IMG/VR virus record: IMGVR_UViG_3300048591_000147
Span: 250,957-314,956 of that record
DNA: 64,000 nucleotides
Strand: one strand, 5' to 3'
Position numbers and translations under genes: made by a program. This document shows positions 56,142 through 64,000 of this stretch, piece by piece; the first letter of the stretch is position 1, and each line of letters opens with the position of its first letter. The notes under the pieces are model-generated. The model made no database searches and had not been told where the DNA came from. It saw only the letters and a program-made list of their open reading frames with translations.

Positions 56142-57257
56142 ATGGACAGAGTTACAGAGTTAGTTGAGAAGTTAAAGCACTTTGACGAAGCGTATTTCAA
56201 TGCTTCCATAACCGATGAAGTGCTTGATGACAATGAATACGATAATCTTAGGAACAAGCTAAAACTATTGGACCCATCTAACCAGTATTTTACTGGTATT
56301 GGGTCTGATGTTCGCGGTGGTAAGGTTCCCCTACCATTCCCGATGGGATCATTAAATCAAGTATATGATGATAATGACATCCTGAATTGGATAACGAAGT
56401 ATGGCATTTCGAGTGCTGTCATATCTGATAAATTGGATGGATGTTCTTGTGAGCTAATCTATAGAGATGGCCAGTTTGCACAGGCGTTCTCTAGGGGTAA
56501 TGGCGTCGAAGGCGCTGACATAACAAGAAACATTGCGCTAATCCCTAATGTGCCTAAAACTATATCTGCTGGTTATTTGTTCCCAGATGACATCGTAGTC
56601 AGAGCGGAAGTGATCATCAAGAATTTAGTATTTGATGTGAAATATTCAAAAGAATTTAAGAATAGCCGCAATATGGTGGCTGGTATTCTTAATAGAAAAC
56701 TTCCAACAGAAGACGTACTGGGTGACTTCGAAGTTATTGTTTATGAAATAATGGACGGTGTAACCAATCTTACGAAGGCCAAAGAATTGGAGCTTCTTAA
56801 GCAATATGGTTTTACCGTTGTGGAATATCAGACTCATCCAATTGACATTCTGAATGATAATGATCTGGGTAAAATGGTCTTTGATCGAAAGGCAAAGTCT
56901 GCATACCTGTTAGACGGGTTGGTAATAACTACAGACACGTATAAAAACATTTCTGCACAGTCTAACTCGTCATCGTTAAATCCAGAACATTCAGTAAAGT
57001 ATAAGAATCTTTCTAGAGATGCATACCGTGAAGTGTCGGTAGTTGACGTCCTATGGGAATTGTCAATGAATGGACTATGGAAGCCTCGCGTACAGATTGT
57101 CCCAACGGAACTAGATGGTGTCACTATAACCTACGTCACTGGACATAACGGGCGTTTTATATACGATAACAAGATAATGCCGGGGACTGTAGTTAAAATC
57201 GTCAGAGCAGGATCAGTTATACCTCAAATCGTCGGGGTGATATCCGTTCCTACGTAA
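56142..57257 (+). CDS. ligA: NAD-dependent DNA ligase, N-terminal piece (Ia, adenylation, OB)
   Basis: YF...DDNEYD, MGSL, KLDG, RGNG..G.DIT, RAEV, DGLVI, VKYK, RAGSVIP. Confidence 0.92.
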   Translation: MDRVTELVEKLKHFDEAYFNASITDEVLDDNEYDNLRNKLKLLDPSNQYFTGIGSDVRGGKVPLPFPMGSLNQVYDDNDILNWITKYGISSAVISDKLDGCSCELIYRDGQFAQAFSRGNGVEGADITRNIALIPNVPKTISAGYLFPDDIVVRAEVIIKNLVFDVKYSKEFKNSRNMVAGILNRKLPTEDVLGDFEVIVYEIMDGVTNLTKAKELELLKQYGFTVVEYQTHPIDILNDNDLGKMVFDRKAKSAYLLDGLVITTDTYKNISAQSNSSSLNPEHSVKYKNLSRDAYREVSVVDVLWELSMNGLWKPRVQIVPTELDGVTITYVTGHNGRFIYDNKIMPGTVVKIVRAGSVIPQIVGVISVPT

Positions 57258-58007
57258 AAAATCATAAATTATACTTCTCAAGGAATCAAAAGAACGATGC
57301 TTGTGATTAATTCGTAATAATGGGATGTTGTTATTGTAAGCATACATATATTTTTTGTAGTCATATTCGGCATTTTTTGTAAATTTTTCCAATGCTTCCT
57401 TGTCCGTAGTTATACCACATCTGAACATTCTCTTTGGATCAGTGTGTTGTACCCCATCATATTCTATCAATAAGTTAAAATCGTTTAGATAGAAATCGAA
57501 GCGTAGGTCACAATAATCACCAACTAAACCGTTGAATTTCTTATCAAATGTATGTTTTATTCCATAGACATTTGTTAATATATCTGATATTTTTCTCTCA
57601 GCACTTGACATTTTTTTAGAACATAGAGGACAACCTTGACCAAATAAATGTTTCCCCGGAGCTATCTTAAAATCAGCATGAATAGGACACATGACGATTA
57701 TCTTGGTGGTGGAATTTGTATATTCTACTTTATCGTAATTATATCTACCACCATGAATGAAATTGAATTGTGATTTCAATGTATTGATATCTTTTCTCTT
57801 TATGTTCCCTATTTTATCAGACTTACATTTAGCACAGCCGGATTTGTCTAAGTGTTGATTAGGAACTTGTTCAAAGTCTCCATGAATTGGACAAGTTATA
57901 GTAACTTTCGATTTTACTGTAGTATACGTGGTTTTATCATATGTATATTTGTTATTATGTATCTTATTAGCTTTTTCAATAAATTGTTCTGTTGTGACTC
58001 TTTTCAT
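57213..58007 (-). mobile_element. homing endonuclease-like ORF (zinc-ribbon repeats + PD-(D/E)xK/Vsr-like domain)
   Basis: Two H..KY.Y......CPIHG.F...P..H...GC..C repeats, RFDFYL...LIEYDG.QH; AGAGGT SD before ATG 58007; TATAAATA at 58062-58069 (minus). Confidence 0.8.
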
Positions 58008-58085
58008 GTACGGAATTACCTCTTGATTCTTTTTGTTTCCGGTGTATAATACCATTCATTGTATTTATAAGGTGTGTAGATTTTT

Positions 58086-58898
58086 ATGGATAAATTTGAA
58101 AAATATTTTAACGATTCAATGAATAAACTAATGGGCGAGGGTAATTGGTGTTGGAGTCCATCTGGTGTAGAAGTTATGATCCCAGATCATAATAACAATC
58201 CGAAGGTAAAATTTAAACAAGCCTTAGCGTTCTTTGATACCCTGAACGTTGATTTGTTGAAAGAGGCTTCCCTGAAGTCCGTGTTTGACAAGTACAATCT
58301 ATACAATCTTTCATATGATAACATCATTGTATTCTTGGTTGAGCTTCTTGAACTGGAGTGGGTCAGGGTAATTGGTTCGAATGGTAAAAAGATTTTCAAC
58401 AGCTTACATAATAAGCTACAGAAATTACCTCCTGAAGAGTTTTTAGGCGCCCTCAGATATTTTGGCGCAGGGTTCGGTGTTAGAAAATCCAAAATGCTGT
58501 TAAATCAATGTGATGGTATACATGCTGTCAAACATTTATCAGAGAACGATATTGTTAATATGGTTGGATTTGACACAACCACTGCAAAAATGATACTTTC
58601 AGGTATTGATGAAGCACTACTTTTATTAGAGCGCTTGAAGGATTACATCACATTAGTTAAGAAGGTGGCAGTGTCCGCTGATCTTTCACACCTTAATGTG
58701 GTGCTGACGGGTTTCAGAGATTCTACATTACAGAATTTTATTGAAATGAATGGCGGTAAGGTTGGTTCGGGTGTAAGCAAAAAGACAACACACCTAATCT
58801 GCTCGTCAGTGGATTCCGGCTCTTCAAAATATAAGAAGGCACAGGAACTGGGTGTTACTGTAATAACACTTGAGGATTTTAAAAATCAATACCTATAA
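58086..58898 (+). CDS. ligA: NAD-dependent DNA ligase, C-terminal piece (HhH + BRCT)
   Basis: GFGVRKSK and GFDTTTAK HhH-like turns; VVLTGFRD...NGGKVGSGVSKKTTHLI...KYKKAQELGV BRCT. Confidence 0.88.
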   Translation: MDKFEKYFNDSMNKLMGEGNWCWSPSGVEVMIPDHNNNPKVKFKQALAFFDTLNVDLLKEASLKSVFDKYNLYNLSYDNIIVFLVELLELEWVRVIGSNGKKIFNSLHNKLQKLPPEEFLGALRYFGAGFGVRKSKMLLNQCDGIHAVKHLSENDIVNMVGFDTTTAKMILSGIDEALLLLERLKDYITLVKKVAVSADLSHLNVVLTGFRDSTLQNFIEMNGGKVGSGVSKKTTHLICSSVDSGSSKYKKAQELGVTVITLEDFKNQYL

Positions 58899-59169: not shown

Positions 59170-59433
59170 ATGAATTTTTCAGAAGCATTAGTAGAAATAA
59201 AAAACGGTAAGAAGGTTTCAAGAGAAGGGTGGAATGGTAAGGGGATGTTTGTATTCTTAGTACCGGGTTCTACCTTTAAAGTTAGTAGAGCACCATTACT
59301 TGGAATTTACCCAGAGGGTACTGAAATAAAGTATCATGCCCATGTTGATATGAAAACTGCGGACAATCAGGTAGTTCCATGGTTAGTTTCTCAGACTGAT
59401 TTATTGGCTGATGATTGGGGCGTTGTTGAATGA
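59170..59433 (+). CDS. tad2: Tad2-like (DUF2829) anti-Thoeris sponge protein
   Basis: FSEAL...GKKVSREGWNGKGMFVFL...KTADN...W.VSQTDLLADDW. Confidence 0.85.
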   Translation: MNFSEALVEIKNGKKVSREGWNGKGMFVFLVPGSTFKVSRAPLLGIYPEGTEIKYHAHVDMKTADNQVVPWLVSQTDLLADDWGVVE

Positions 59434-59654
59434 AAATATCTCCAGAGATGCTCGACCAATTCAAAGATGATAAAGCGGGATTGTTAAAGTTAATTAGAGA
59501 GATGGCACCTAAGAAAATTGCAGAAGAACTTTGTAGCGTCCAACCGATGGATGGCATCGATTTGATGACTGTAGCGGACGCTTTAGAAAATTATAAATGG
59601 GCTACACCACATTGTAGGCTGGGTGTTCCATATAATGAAGAAAATGATAAATAA
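59430..59654 (+). CDS. small hypothetical protein with capsid-like SVQPM motif
   Basis: IAEELCSVQPM. Confidence 0.5.
   Translation: MKISPEMLDQFKDDKAGLLKLIREMAPKKIAEELCSVQPMDGIDLMTVADALENYKWATPHCRLGVPYNEENDK
59646..59653 (+). promoter_or_regulatory. late promoter core upstream of tmRNA
   Basis: GATAAATA 7 nt before the predicted acceptor-piece 5' end. Confidence 0.55.
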
Positions 59655-59660
59655 GAATAT

Positions 59661-59724
59661 GGTTGTATGATGTGACTCGAAAAGCTTTGCGGAAGCGATC
59701 TTCGACTGGTCGCCTACTCCACCA
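59661..59724 (+). ncRNA. ssrA: tmRNA acceptor piece (permuted gene)
   Basis: T-arm GCGATC-TTCGACT-GGTCGC then CTACTCC-A-CCA; pairs with GGGGTAG at 59867 including G3:U; 5' end approximate. Confidence 0.85.
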
Positions 59725-59866
59725 AAATTACTAGTAGCCACTAAGGTAGGAAGGGTATCGTGAACCTTTATCCTAGTGACCTTGACAAGGCCAAGGTAGG
59801 GATTAGTTGCCTAACAGCTTAGAATGTGTCGGTTTGATTTCTAGGCGTGCTAATAGTAATTTTGAT
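59725..59866 (+). ncRNA. structured intervening segment of pre-tmRNA
   Basis: Closed by AAATTACTAGTAGC / GCTAATAGTAATTT (13 of 14 paired), with internal hairpins. Confidence 0.6.
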
Positions 59867-60043
59867 GGGGTAGTAAGGATTCGACGGAAAGAATAGTACA
59901 GAAGCGGACAACCGGATAGATGACTGACCTAATCAGCATAAAAACTATAAATGCAAGCAATGACGCATTTTATGATGTCGAGTACGCGCAAGCGGCATGA
60001 ACTATCACGGGGCCTAATCCGCCTTGTTACCCAATAAGATTGC
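59867..60043 (+). ncRNA. ssrA: tmRNA coding piece; tag (A)SNDAFYDVEYAQAA*
   Basis: GGGGTAGTAAGGATTCGAC 5' end; resume codon GCA at 59953 after AT-rich ATAAAT; tag ends AA-stop at 60000; 3' end approximate. Confidence 0.88.
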
Positions 60044-60070
60044 AAAACACCAGCGAAAGCTGGTGTTTTT
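60044..60070 (+). terminator. intrinsic terminator
   Basis: AAAACACCAGC-GAAA-GCTGGTGTTTTT. Confidence 0.9.
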
Positions 60071-60402: not shown

Positions 60403-61107
60403 ATGCAGCAAAATAGAAACAGAAACAACTCTGAATTACCGGGTAACGACTTTCTCGTATTACAGCCACAAGATGCAAGCGCTATTAGATGTTTCAAGCA
60501 AGTAATACCATTAACAATATACCACTATTACATTTCTGATCCTATTGAAGATCATGCACCATTCTACGATCTATTGAATACATTGAAGACCGCAGAGGCA
60601 CATGATAGAATCATCATTTACTTAAATTGTCCGGGCGGCGCATTATACGTTGCTATCCAAATCGTTAATGCAATACAAACCTCTCAGGCTACTGTTATAA
60701 CATGTTTAGATGGCCAAGTGTGTTCAGCCGCTACACTGATCTTTTTAGTGGGTCACGAATACATAGTAAATAAACATGGTAGTTTCATGATTCACAACTA
60801 CTCCGAAGGTGTCGTTGGTAAGGGTAATGAAATAATTTCAAGAGTTAAACACGCGACTGACTGGTTTGAAAAATTAACTTATGACATATATGGTAATTTT
60901 TTAACTGCAAAGGAGATCGAAGATATATTACAGGGTAAGGATCTATGGCTAGACAGTGATGCAGTTCTAGAAAGATTGCAAAAAAATGAACAGAAAGAAG
61001 ATGCAGAGGAACAGGCAGAAGAGGAAGTCGAAGAAATTGTTCCAATAAAAGTGAAGCGACTCGCCAAACCGAAGCCACCCGCAAAGAAAATAGATAAAAA
61101 GAAGTAA
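60403..61107 (+). CDS. clpP: ClpP-like serine protease
   Basis: IYLNCPGG, VCSAAT (catalytic Ser), FMIHN (His), KDLWL; CATAAATA at 60373-60380. Confidence 0.85.
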   Translation: MQQNRNRNNSELPGNDFLVLQPQDASAIRCFKQVIPLTIYHYYISDPIEDHAPFYDLLNTLKTAEAHDRIIIYLNCPGGALYVAIQIVNAIQTSQATVITCLDGQVCSAATLIFLVGHEYIVNKHGSFMIHNYSEGVVGKGNEIISRVKHATDWFEKLTYDIYGNFLTAKEIEDILQGKDLWLDSDAVLERLQKNEQKEDAEEQAEEEVEEIVPIKVKRLAKPKPPAKKIDKKK

Positions 61108-62609: not shown

Positions 62610-64000
62610 ATGACTTGTGAATTGCTACCCGGTTTAGTTAAGCCAATAGATGCTTTAATTAAATACTTCTTAGAGGTTAAACCATATCACACAAAACTTT
62701 TAGAAGTTATTGAGCGCTATAGGTTTAATGAATATATCACGGTAGGATTTGAAGAAAATCATACACTGAATCTAACAAAAACCAACAGGGCACTTTGCGG
62801 TCCTGTTGGTTTTGGTCTTGAATGGGATGAGGCATGTGGTTTCGACGCCACCGAGTGTTGTGATTTATTTCAATGTATCGGTGGTTATGGTCTGATATAT
62901 GACAACTCCGACCTGTTGGTAGATTTACCTGTTTCCAGTATAGATGGAGTCAGCGATTCTTTCGTCTTGGATGGTGATCAGACTGCCGACAAGAAGATAC
63001 AAATTTGGTCAATCACTAATAATAATACAATAAAATTGCAGGGTGATTACACAGCGTACTTCGACATACATAAATTATTCCTAATAGTACCATTTAATAT
63101 ATTTGACATAGTAACCATCACCACAAATAGCTTTTATGTGTCTGGCAATAAAGAGTCGGAACTAGCAGCTAGAAAAGAATTCAGAGTAACCAATAGCAGA
63201 TACAATAACGGTGTGTTTGCTATTAAGGTAGTTAGATATTTACCTGACATCAATAAGACCGAGATCATAGTAAATAATACTTTAGATCTTACGGAAGTCT
63301 CAGGTACAATAGAAGTAAAAAGCCCAAACAAAAATAATGGCGTTTATCAAATAGATTCCAATATATTTGATGGTGTGTTCACGGTATTGACCATCAATTC
63401 TTCTAATACATTAAATTATAACAACCAATCTTCAAATGGGTGCATTCAGTTAAGAACTGGATTTATGGCCCCGCGAAGAGTATGGCATTATAGCCCAGAT
63501 GATTTACAAGTCAAAGAATTCAAGATAAGCAATTCCACTTATGACAGTGTAACCGATAAAACGCACGTTGTCACTGCTGAAAAAATATACACGCCGTTGG
63601 CAGGTAATGGTGATTTAAGAATTTATGGTTACAGATTTGGCGCAGGGTTTGATGGGTTCGAAGAGTGTTCGACGCCCAAACCATATAACATACACGCGAC
63701 GATTGGCGAGGTATTACGAATAACAGTCAATACGATGGTCACGCCAACACCTACACCAACCGTGTCCGTAAGTTCTGGTGTAGCACCTGAAGCATTACTC
63801 CAACAGAATGGTGACTCTATACTTCAACAGAATGGTAATCGTATCTTATTATCTAATGCGATTACTCCAACAGTTACTCCAACAGTTACTCCAACAGTTA
63901 CTCCAACAGTTACTCCAACAGTTACTCCAACAGTTACTCCAACAGTTACTCCAACAGTTACTCCAACAGTTACTCCAACAGTTACTCCAACAGTTACTCC
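62610..64000 (+). CDS. virion structural protein, 3'-truncated by window edge
   Basis: AGGA SD, GATAAATA at 62589; MTCELLPGL...LEVKPYHTKLLE; in frame with the final (TPTV)n; absent from the track, consistent with no stop before the edge. Confidence 0.7.
   Translation, partial: MTCELLPGLVKPIDALIKYFLEVKPYHTKLLEVIERYRFNEYITVGFEENHTLNLTKTNRALCGPVGFGLEWDEACGFDATECCDLFQCIGGYGLIYDNSDLLVDLPVSSIDGVSDSFVLDGDQTADKKIQIWSITNNNTIKLQGDYTAYFDIHKLFLIVPFNIFDIVTITTNSFYVSGNKESELAARKEFRVTNSRYNNGVFAIKVVRYLPDINKTEIIVNNTLDLTEVSGTIEVKSPNKNNGVYQIDSNIFDGVFTVLTINSSNTLNYNNQSSNGCIQLRTGFMAPRRVWHYSPDDLQVKEFKISNSTYDSVTDKTHVVTAEKIYTPLAGNGDLRIYGYRFGAGFDGFEECSTPKPYNIHATIGEVLRITVNTMVTPTPTPTVSVSSGVAPEALLQQNGDSILQQNGNRILLSNAITPTVTPTVTPTVTPTVTPTVTPTVTPTVTPTVTPTVTPTVTPTVT
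63862..64000 (+). repeat. 12-bp perfect tandem repeat (TTACTCCAACAG)n, at least 11.5 units
   Basis: Directly visible; encodes (TPTV)n and continues past the window end. Confidence 0.97.

What the first reader, a model, noticed from the sequence alone, without database searches (positions are those of the whole stretch)
59725..59866. 142-nt structured RNA nested in the tmRNA intervening segment
To my knowledge the excised spacer of permuted tmRNAs is usually short. Here it is closed by a 14-bp stem with one mismatch and contains further hairpins (CACTA/TAGTG with TAGGA/TCCTA, ACCTTG/CAAGGT, TTAG/CTAA, TAGAA/TTCTA). tmRNA maturation would release it as a discrete multi-branched RNA, possibly a separate ncRNA, a folding chaperone or a degenerate mobile remnant. 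I recognise no known ribozyme core in it.
Basis: partly seen in the sequence, partly recalled or inferred. Interest (0 to 1): 0.65.

Follow-up and report, generated by a model that had tools for sequence, protein, structure and literature searches.

The report
Swappable spacer in phage tmRNA gene
The 142 bases are the cut-out spacer of a giant phage's two-piece tmRNA gene; only its closing stem is conserved, its interior is an insert that related phages have exchanged, and nothing shows it is a separate structured RNA.

Summary
Window 59661-60000 (+) is a circularly permuted tmRNA gene (Rfam RF04321, 83 bits, cut-off 47) in a 315-kb jumbo phage. Positions 59725-59866 are its 142-nt intervening sequence, closed by a 13-bp stem with one G/A mismatch.

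The "multi-branched structured RNA" reading is not supported:
- The interior alone folds no better than shuffles (z -1.07).
- In the one homologous copy on a different tmRNA backbone (L037) it folds worse than shuffles (z +0.89), and substitutions break the proposed hairpins.
- No Rfam family, ORF, promoter or second copy was found.

Across 18 distinct spacers of related phage tmRNAs (27-165 nt, plus two of 5 nt), the shared feature is a closing stem next to the CCA, with 3-7 free bases before G1. The interiors are unrelated.

The new point is that the spacer's history is decoupled from the gene around it:
- L037 carries the same 142-nt element at 94% identity, while its acceptor piece is 72% identical.
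- The nearest backbone relative, L009 (97% in both mature pieces), has an unalignable 132-nt spacer.

Best reading: an expanded processing hairpin whose distal insert is passenger sequence spread by recombination in a region rich in homing endonucleases. A functional released RNA is not excluded.

The parts
59661..59724 (+). tmRNA acceptor piece: 5' strand of the long-range helix, a T-arm with a 6-bp stem, the 3' strand of the acceptor stem, and an encoded CCA
   Evidence: RF04321 alignment; sequence
59725..59866 (+). Intervening sequence (IVS, spacer) of the permuted tmRNA gene, 142 nt
   Evidence: Lies between the CCA and G1 in the RF04321 alignment. The same element is in L037/L038 at 94% identity and in contigs of runs X5, X7 and X19
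59725..59738 (+). 5' arm of the closing stem, directly next to the CCA
   Evidence: Minimum-energy fold. An equivalent stem occurs in 15 of 18 distinct spacers, against 5-20% of shuffles each
59739..59848 (+).
   Evidence: z -1.07 here and +0.89 in L037. No Rfam match. No other copy anywhere searched
59849..59862 (+). 3' arm of the closing stem
59863..59866 (+). TGAT, the short leader before G1 of the coding piece. In the precursor fold it pairs in part with the ACCA end. U at -1
   Evidence: Full-gene fold. Relatives have 3-7 unpaired bases at this place
59867..60000 (+). tmRNA coding piece up to the tag stop codon. The resume codon GCA is at 59953; the tag is ASNDAFYDVEYAQAA*
60044..60069 (+). 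Intrinsic terminator ending the tmRNA transcription unit

Best explanation
The 142 nt are the intervening sequence of a phage-encoded two-piece (beta-type permuted) tmRNA. The precursor is made as one transcript: there is no promoter in the spacer and a single terminator after the coding piece. The two ends of the spacer pair into an A/U-rich stem that stacks on the acceptor stem, giving about 23 bp of nearly continuous helix. This stem is the selected part. It holds the acceptor and coding halves in register while the tRNA-like domain folds. It also presents the junctions for host RNase P at G1 and for 3' trimming to the CCA, possibly after an RNase III or RNase E cut in the stem. The distal ~110 nt is passenger sequence inserted at the tip of what was once a short hairpin of ~30 nt, as still seen in most relatives. 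It is removed with the spacer and probably degraded. The module has moved between related wastewater jumbo phages by recombination or gene conversion, with end points in the short conserved junctions (TCCACCAAAA on the left, TTT..GGGG on the right). Only exchanges that leave the two co-adapted mature halves together survive. Shown: gene identity, boundaries, the closing stem across the family, lack of significant interior structure, and the decoupled history. Inferred: the processing enzymes, the clamp role, degradation of the excised RNA, and the recombination mechanism.
For: Gene and boundaries. Closing stem: present in 15 of 18 distinct spacers with unrelated sequences. Compensatory change in the stem: CTAC/GTAG to CCAC/GTGG between the Menderavirus-type spacers L002 and L023. 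Spacer lengths of 5 to 165 nt in phage tmRNAs that share the GACTGACCTAATCAGC block. Interior not above chance, and destabilised in the homologue: L037 scores -28.1 on the window's structure against -42 for the window itself. Unrelated interiors in other long spacers. No Rfam family, promoter or second copy. Decoupled history: spacer 134/142 identical to L037, against 49/68 for the acceptor piece, 114/136 for the coding piece and 182/231 for the upstream ORF (Fisher p = 3e-5, 0.006 and 3e-5). L009 is 97% identical in both mature pieces yet its spacer does not align. General mosaicism: a neighbour protein >= 90% identical to ours sits next to other tmRNA backbones with 58-nt and 31-nt spacers. 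In run X5 a ~330-nt near-identical tract (4 differences) is flanked by about 13% divergence. Homing endonucleases lie beside the tmRNA in L032/L036 and inside the ligase gene in the window.
Against: The element has kept exactly 142 nt, with no indel, in four variants, and positions 11-48 are invariant. Nine of the ten variable sites are transitions, against about 62% in the neighbouring ORF (p about 0.06), which is what a structured RNA would show. One pair (49:76) changes on both sides, C-G to U-A, in L037. The junction microhomology of 10-14 nt is short for ordinary homologous recombination. No experiment shows that the excised RNA is unstable. A contig from an RNA library (X19) covers the spacer, but contigs cannot tell precursor from product or from DNA.
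Confidence: 0.6

Rival explanations
1. The interior is a functional non-coding RNA that rides in the tmRNA precursor and is released with defined ends by the tRNA-processing enzymes. It could act as a decoy, a sponge or an anti-defence RNA. The gene sits in an island of anti-defence genes.
For: The module is kept at 94-99% identity and constant length on two different tmRNA backbones. Positions 11-48 are invariant, and there is a transition bias plus one double-sided pair change. Tad2-like and Acb2/Tad1-like genes lie next door in the window and in relatives.
Against: The interior folds no better than shuffles, and worse in L037. Five of eight substitutions at paired positions break pairs on the tmRNA strand. 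Most close relatives manage with 27-33 nt, and L009 has an unrelated 132-nt sequence in the same place. There is no Rfam match. The high identity is equally explained by recent exchange: in X5 the mature parts are as similar as the spacer, 2/142 against 2/168.
Confidence: 0.13
2. The element is a miniature mobile element, or the remnant of one: MITE-like or Correia-like with terminal inverted repeats, or an IS200/IS605-type palindromic element. It inserted into the spacer hairpin, and its inverted ends now act as the closing stem.
For: It has 14-nt imperfect terminal inverted repeats. Its distribution is cassette-like and sporadic among close relatives. Hairpins sit near both ends. The literature reports a repetitive element inside another permuted tmRNA's IVS (PMC11915505).
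Against: It is single-copy in the 315-kb genome, and no copy occurs outside tmRNA genes in any locus, in IMG/VR, in the GTDB representative genomes, or in the plasmid or phage collections. There is no target-site duplication at the junctions. The phage has no Y1 transposase or TnpB. The base of the stem (AAATTA.../...TAATTT) resembles the short hairpin of relatives such as L028, so the stem is at least partly ancestral rather than imported.
Confidence: 0.15
3. The conserved structure lies on the opposite strand, as an antisense RNA or a DNA-level hairpin across the spacer.
For: The minus strand scores z -3.6 in the window and -3.7 in L037. All four variants keep the window's minus-strand fold within 3.2 kcal/mol. 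Four of five substitutions at paired minus-strand positions are wobble-compatible.
Against: Minus-strand interiors alone are not significant (z -1.64 and -1.59). The asymmetry follows from the window carrying U or G at seven of the eight sites where it differs from L037, so the test is not independent of base composition. No minus-strand promoter faces the spacer. L009's spacer folds better on the tmRNA strand, z -2.73 against -1.09.
Confidence: 0.04

Closest known systems
Intervening sequences of circularly permuted (two-piece) tmRNA genes, including phage-encoded ones (tmRNA database 2025, PMC11915505; Melnitz phage study, PMC9004378)
   Same: Gene order is acceptor piece, IVS, coding piece. 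The IVS is absent from the mature RNA. Phage copies are known: 79 phage sequences in the database, and 53 of 133 unique phage tmRNAs are two-piece. Long IVSs are already recorded, one holding a tRNA-Ala gene and one a repetitive element.
   Different: Here the IVS has no recognisable cargo. I found no description of a family-wide closing stem, which the Rfam models leave unpaired. I also found no description of an IVS that is exchanged as a cassette independently of the mature pieces.
Intervening sequences of bacterial 23S rRNA (helix 25 and helix 45 IVSs excised by RNase III; e.g. Coxiella, PMC4990558; review PMC8708148)
   Same: An extended stem-loop replaces a short hairpin in a stable RNA gene, is cut out without re-ligation to leave a functional RNA in pieces, is sporadic among close relatives, and is thought to spread laterally (for the papers; the rest from established knowledge).
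   Different: The host RNA is a tmRNA that is already two-piece by design. RNase III cleavage is not shown here. The ends are set by tRNA-type processing.
Functional by-products of tRNA processing, e.g. the 3'ETS-leuZ sRNA sponge of E. coli
   Different: No evidence here of stability, targets or conserved structure.
Free-standing homing endonucleases of T4-like phages that drive local gene conversion, e.g. SegB in the T4 tRNA gene region (own knowledge)
   Same: A GIY-YIG homing endonuclease gene lies 4 nt upstream of the tmRNA in L032/L036, and an HNH endonuclease gene splits the ligase gene in the window. The region is a fine-scale mosaic.
   Different: No endonuclease gene sits beside the tmRNA in the window itself. 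No cleavage site is known.

Membership tests
Permuted (two-piece) tmRNA gene, RF04321 | Covariance-model score above the curated cut-off | tested here: met
   83 bits against 47, full model 1-213. The beta_tmRNA model gives 35.9 bits, below its cut-off of 84, for the window, but passes in relatives L004, L005 and Marzo
Permuted (two-piece) tmRNA gene, RF04321 | Acceptor stem formed between the 3' end of the upstream piece (with CCA) and the 5' end of the downstream piece, with G3.U70 | tested here: met
   GGGGTAG pairs with CTACTCC, followed by A-CCA; the third pair is G.U
Permuted (two-piece) tmRNA gene, RF04321 | Tag reading frame that starts at an alanine resume codon and ends in a hydrophobic ..AA stop | tested here: met
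   59953-60000 reads ASNDAFYDVEYAQAA*. ARAGORN reads ASNDEFFDVEYAKAA* in L037
Permuted (two-piece) tmRNA gene, RF04321 | Precursor cleaved into two RNAs with loss of the IVS | not testable with these tools
   Only contigs were available. An RNA-library contig spans the junctions but cannot show ends
Known structured RNA families, ribozymes and riboswitches (Rfam 15) | A match of the spacer to any of 4227 covariance models | tested here: not met
   No match inside 59725-59866 at E <= 10
Conserved structured ncRNA (generic) | Folding energy beyond shuffles, and base pairs kept through compensatory change in homologues | tested here: not met
   Interior z is -1.07 (window) and +0.89 (L037). One double-sided change, two wobble-to-Watson-Crick changes and five broken pairs. 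Only four variants, so power is low
MITE, Correia or IS200/605-type miniature elements | Terminal or subterminal inverted repeats | tested here: met
   14-nt imperfect inverted ends
MITE, Correia or IS200/605-type miniature elements | Multiple copies, target-site duplication, cognate transposase | tested here: not met
   Single copy. No copies elsewhere. No duplication at the ends. No Y1 transposase or TnpB in the phage. A host-encoded transposase could not be tested
Group I intron in tmRNA | Insertion in the T-loop and a group I catalytic core | tested here: not met
   The insert lies between the CCA and G1, not in the T-loop. No Intron_gpI match
rRNA-type IVS (RNase III-excised expansion hairpin) | Long closing helix cleaved by RNase III | not testable with these tools
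   A helix of about 23 bp, counting the stacked acceptor stem, is predicted. The cleaving enzyme is unknown, and the phage has no RNase III gene

The most novel reading that the evidence does not exclude
The 142-nt element is a self-contained RNA module that spreads horizontally between phage tmRNA genes and uses the host's tRNA-processing enzymes to be released with exact ends. It would be either a new kind of small mobile intervening sequence specific to tmRNA spacers, or a trans-acting phage RNA, possibly anti-defence, that hitch-hikes on an essential-looking RNA gene.
Probability: 0.12. Interest if true: 0.7.

Novelty: new variant of a known kind. Interest (0 to 1): 0.4.

Why it matters
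Two-piece tmRNAs and their excised spacers are known, and phage copies are catalogued, so the gene itself is ordinary. Three points go beyond that.

1. In this phage family the spacer is not a free loop. It is a hairpin whose closing stem is kept across unrelated sequences. That makes the stem a testable determinant of how the two halves of a split RNA are matured together.

2. The spacer behaves as a cassette. The same 142-nt element sits on tmRNA backbones that are only 72-84% identical, while a 97%-identical backbone carries an unrelated 132-nt spacer. This is a clean natural example of exchange confined to the one segment that can change without separating two co-adapted RNA halves.

3. 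There is a practical lesson for annotation. ARAGORN misses this gene, and gene callers place short ORFs over such tmRNA genes (L029/L030).

If the element proved to be a released functional RNA, it would be a new route for phages to express small RNAs.

Tried and rejected
- ARAGORN on the window found no tmRNA. It does find the L037 gene, so the spacer length is not the cause. I suspect the 6-bp T stem, but did not test this.
- The 21-mer at the 5' end of the coding piece hit only L003 in IMG/VR. L003 has no tmRNA by Rfam and differs right after the 21-mer, so I treated it as irrelevant.
- The search for related loci with the ClpP-like neighbour found nothing.
- The spacer as a repeat: no second copy in the genome, none by a 22-mer from the invariant part in IMG/VR or the GTDB representatives, and none by blastn in the plasmid or phage collections.
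- An internal promoter that would make the two pieces separate transcripts: none found.
- A small ORF in the spacer: the only ORF of 40 aa or more that touches it is a minus-strand one, 59583-59741, which covers just its first 17 nt.
- A CRISPR-repeat, tRNA, riboswitch or ribozyme inside the spacer: no Rfam match at E <= 10.
- An IS200/605-type origin: no Y1 transposase or TnpB.
- Phage-encoded SmpB or RNase III: none.
- Homology among long spacers of different lineages (95, 96, 104, 132, 142 and 165 nt): none.
- The antisense-strand structure is a weak lead and is kept only as a rival.
The papers by Keiler et al. 2000 and Sharkady & Williams 2004 are not held.
- The reads tool gave contigs only, so ends, strand and abundance of any RNA could not be assessed.

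Full report
**What is there**

The window is the last 64 kb of a 314,956-bp virus record with direct terminal repeats, that is, a jumbo phage. Rfam's permuted-tmRNA model RF04321 matches 59661-60000 on the + strand over its full length at 83 bits, against a cut-off of 47. It is the only family above threshold in the window.

The sequence shows every defining part:
- An acceptor piece, 59661-59724, with a T-arm and an encoded CCA.
- A coding piece starting at G 59867.
- An acceptor stem GGGGTAG/CTACTCC whose third pair is G.U.
- A tag frame at 59953-60000 reading ASNDAFYDVEYAQAA*.
- An intrinsic terminator at 60044-60069.

ARAGORN does not report the gene.

The closing stem is real. In the minimum-energy fold, 59725-59738 pairs with 59849-59862 as 9 + 4 bp around one G/A mismatch. 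In the fold of the whole gene it stacks on the acceptor stem, giving about 23 bp of almost continuous helix that takes in the ACCA end.

The internal hairpins appear in the minimum-energy fold but are not above chance. The whole spacer has z = -2.4. The interior alone, 59739-59848, has z = -1.07, with 38 of 200 dinucleotide shuffles folding as well. No Rfam model matches inside the spacer at E <= 10. No sigma-70-like promoter lies in it. The only ORF of 40 aa or more that touches it is a minus-strand one that covers just its first 17 nt.

**Relatives**

Patterns from the conserved block before the tag (GACTGACCTAATCAGC) retrieved phage permuted tmRNAs from three sources: IMG/VR, metagenomes, and the Stenotrophomonas Menderavirus group. 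The 74-aa protein encoded just upstream led to 19 further loci of the same jumbo-phage clade, and RF04321 confirmed the tmRNA in the loci scanned.

Spacer lengths are 5, 5, 27, 28, 30, 31, 33, 57, 58, 64, 71, 72, 95, 96, 104, 132, 142 and 165 nt. The window's spacer is therefore long, but it is neither unique nor the longest.

In 15 of 18 distinct spacers, the minimum-energy fold has a closing stem of 7-15 bp that starts 0-3 nt after the CCA and ends 3-7 nt before G1. Shuffles of each spacer give such a stem in 5-20% of cases. The stems differ in sequence. Between L002 and L023, one stem pair changes on both sides (CTAC/GTAG to CCAC/GTGG). The interiors of long spacers from different groups share no similarity. 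The family-wide, selected feature is the closing stem, not the interior.

**The 142-nt element as a module**

L037 and L038 are two contigs from different runs. They carry a spacer of exactly 142 nt that is 134/142 (94%) identical to the window's. Their other parts are much less similar:

| Part compared with the window | Identity |
|---|---|
| Spacer | 134/142 (94%) |
| Acceptor piece | 49/68 (72%) |
| Coding piece | 114/136 (84%) |
| Upstream ORF | 182/231 (79%) |

Fisher tests of the spacer against each of the other three give p = 3e-5, 0.006 and 3e-5.

L009 shows the converse. It is syntenic with the window at 74-81% identity in coding regions, and both mature tmRNA pieces are 97% identical. 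Its 132-nt spacer, however, does not align with the window's at all.

The blocks of similarity end within 8 nt of the CCA and within 4 nt of G1. An assembly chimera is unlikely for three reasons. The shared junction words are shorter than 31 nt. The L037 copy differs at eight sites. The arrangement recurs in independent runs.

Contigs of other wastewater and activated-sludge runs (X5, X7, X19) carry the same element with 2-4 substitutions. In X5 the near-identity covers the whole tract 59644-59974, with 4 differences in 310 nt. Flanks on both sides differ by about 13%, mostly at third codon positions. Within that tract the spacer is no better conserved than the mature parts (2/142 against 2/168). 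The high identity therefore looks like recently shared tracts rather than special constraint on the spacer.

The neighbourhood is mosaic in general. Neighbour proteins in the same 90% cluster as the window's sit beside other tmRNA backbones, with 58-nt or 31-nt spacers.

**Is the interior a conserved structure?**

Four variants (window, L037, the X5/X7 type, X19) differ at ten sites: 10, 49, 50, 52, 59, 76, 79, 105, 111 and 124. There are no indels.

On the tmRNA strand, the consensus fold has:
- one pair that changes on both sides (49:76, C-G to U-A in L037);
- two wobble-to-Watson-Crick changes;
- five substitutions that break pairs.

L037 threaded on the window's structure loses 14 kcal/mol. 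Its interior folds worse than shuffles (z +0.89). Hairpins CACTA/TAGTG and ACCTTG/CAAGGT each acquire mismatches in L037.

Nine of the ten variable sites are transitions, against about 62% in the adjacent ORF. That is suggestive but not significant. Positions 11-48 are invariant.

The complementary strand gives better scores: z -3.6 and -3.7 for the whole element, and four of five substitutions at paired positions are wobble-compatible. Three things weaken this lead:
- Its interiors alone are not significant (z -1.6).
- The asymmetry follows from which variant carries U or G at the variable sites.
- L009's spacer shows the opposite strand preference.

I keep it as a minor rival.

**Origin**

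The element is single-copy in the phage. It was absent from every other collection searched. It has no target-site duplication, and the phage has no Y1 transposase or TnpB.

The base of its stem (AAATTA.../...TAATTT, then T-rich and GAT) resembles the 30-nt hairpin of relatives such as L028. This suggests an insertion into the tip of an ancestral short hairpin.

Homing endonucleases are active nearby. A GIY-YIG gene (phrog_314, E = 1e-42) ends 4 nt before the tmRNA in L032 and L036. An HNH gene (phrog_559, E = 5e-44) on the minus strand splits the NAD-dependent ligase gene in the window. Gene conversion started by such enzymes would explain a fine-scale mosaic. So would ordinary recombination between co-infecting phages, filtered by the need to keep the two base-paired mature halves together.

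**Mechanism proposed**

Shown: one transcription unit, a stem-closed spacer, and boundaries at the CCA and G1.

Inferred from established tRNA and tmRNA processing:
- RNase P cuts at G1, where the -1 base is U.
- The 3' end is trimmed back to the CCA, after an endonucleolytic cut in or near the stem.
- The stem acts as a clamp that keeps the two halves in register until the tRNA-like domain and the long-range helix have formed.
- The interior is passenger sequence that is discarded.

The phage encodes neither SmpB nor RNase III, so host factors would be used.

**Comparison with what is known**

Permuted tmRNA genes, their IVSs and phage-encoded copies are described (PMC11915505, PMC9004378). 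That includes IVSs containing a tRNA gene or a repetitive element, so a long IVS is not new.

The closest functional analogy is the IVS of bacterial 23S rRNA. It is an expansion hairpin that is excised without re-ligation, sporadic in distribution, and laterally spread.

I did not find two things described: a conserved closing stem for tmRNA IVSs, which the Rfam models leave unpaired, and cassette-like exchange of an IVS independently of the mature pieces. Hence 'new variant of a known kind', with moderate interest.

**Limits**

- Only four variants of the element exist in the data reachable here, so covariation tests have little power.
- Raw RNA reads were not available.
- The host is unknown.
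- Two key older papers were not held.

Noticed in passing
window 56142-58898: The NAD-dependent DNA ligase is split into two ORFs: 56142-57257 (adenylation and OB domains) and 58086-58898 (BRCT). Between them lies a minus-strand HNH homing-endonuclease gene, 57213-58055 (phrog_559, E = 5e-44). Relatives L039 and L043 have an intact ligase of 623-626 aa, and L009 lacks the ~870-nt insert. No group I intron was detected by Rfam, so it is unclear whether the ligase works as two chains or is spliced.
   Followed up: partly
window 60403-61107, and the same position in L028, L029, L032, L043, L046: A ClpP-family protease gene (PF00574, E = 1e-14) lies just downstream of the phage tmRNA in the window and in every relative long enough to show it. 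Since tmRNA tags direct proteins to Clp proteases, this conserved pairing may be functional. It may instead be a prohead protease.
   Followed up: no
window 59170-59433; L028, L032, L034, L036, L037, L040, L043: The tmRNA sits in an island of anti-defence genes. The window has a Tad2-like gene (PF11195, E = 1e-26). Relatives carry Acb2/Tad1-hairpin and dATP/dGTP pyrophosphohydrolase genes, in shuffled combinations.
   Followed up: no
window 59430-59654: The conserved 74-aa ORF directly upstream of the tmRNA has a weak match, below the Pfam cut-off, to the N-terminal region of the T4 Gp23 major capsid protein (PF07068, E = 3e-4; phrog_12830 and phrog_138).
   Followed up: no
window 59661-59724; L009: ARAGORN misses this permuted tmRNA and that of L009, but finds the L037 gene, which has the same 142-nt spacer. 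The window and L009 share a T-arm with a 6-bp stem (GCGATC/GGTCGC), which may be the cause. Gene callers placed 71-73-aa ORFs just upstream of, and slightly overlapping, the tmRNA gene in L029 and L030.
   Followed up: partly
L032 2296-3075; L036 965-1744: A free-standing GIY-YIG homing-endonuclease gene (phrog_314, E = 1e-42) ends 4 nt before the tmRNA gene in two relatives. A 207-aa ORF with no family match occupies the same place in L031, L034 and L046.
   Followed up: partly
window 59725-59866, minus strand: The reverse complement of the spacer folds better relative to shuffles (z -3.6; L037 -3.7) than the tmRNA strand does, and the known substitutions are mostly wobble-compatible on that strand.
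   Followed up: partly
window 63862-63992: BLAST alignments to L004 and L010 repeat in steps of 12 nt. This indicates a 12-nt tandem periodicity inside the ORF that starts at 62610 and runs off the end of the window.
   Followed up: no
L003 1089-1109 (minus strand): An unrelated 14.5-kb viral contig carries the exact 21-nt 5' end of the coding piece (GGGGTAGTAAGGATTCGACGG). No complete tmRNA is detectable there by Rfam. It may be a tmRNA fragment or a divergent gene.
   Followed up: partly
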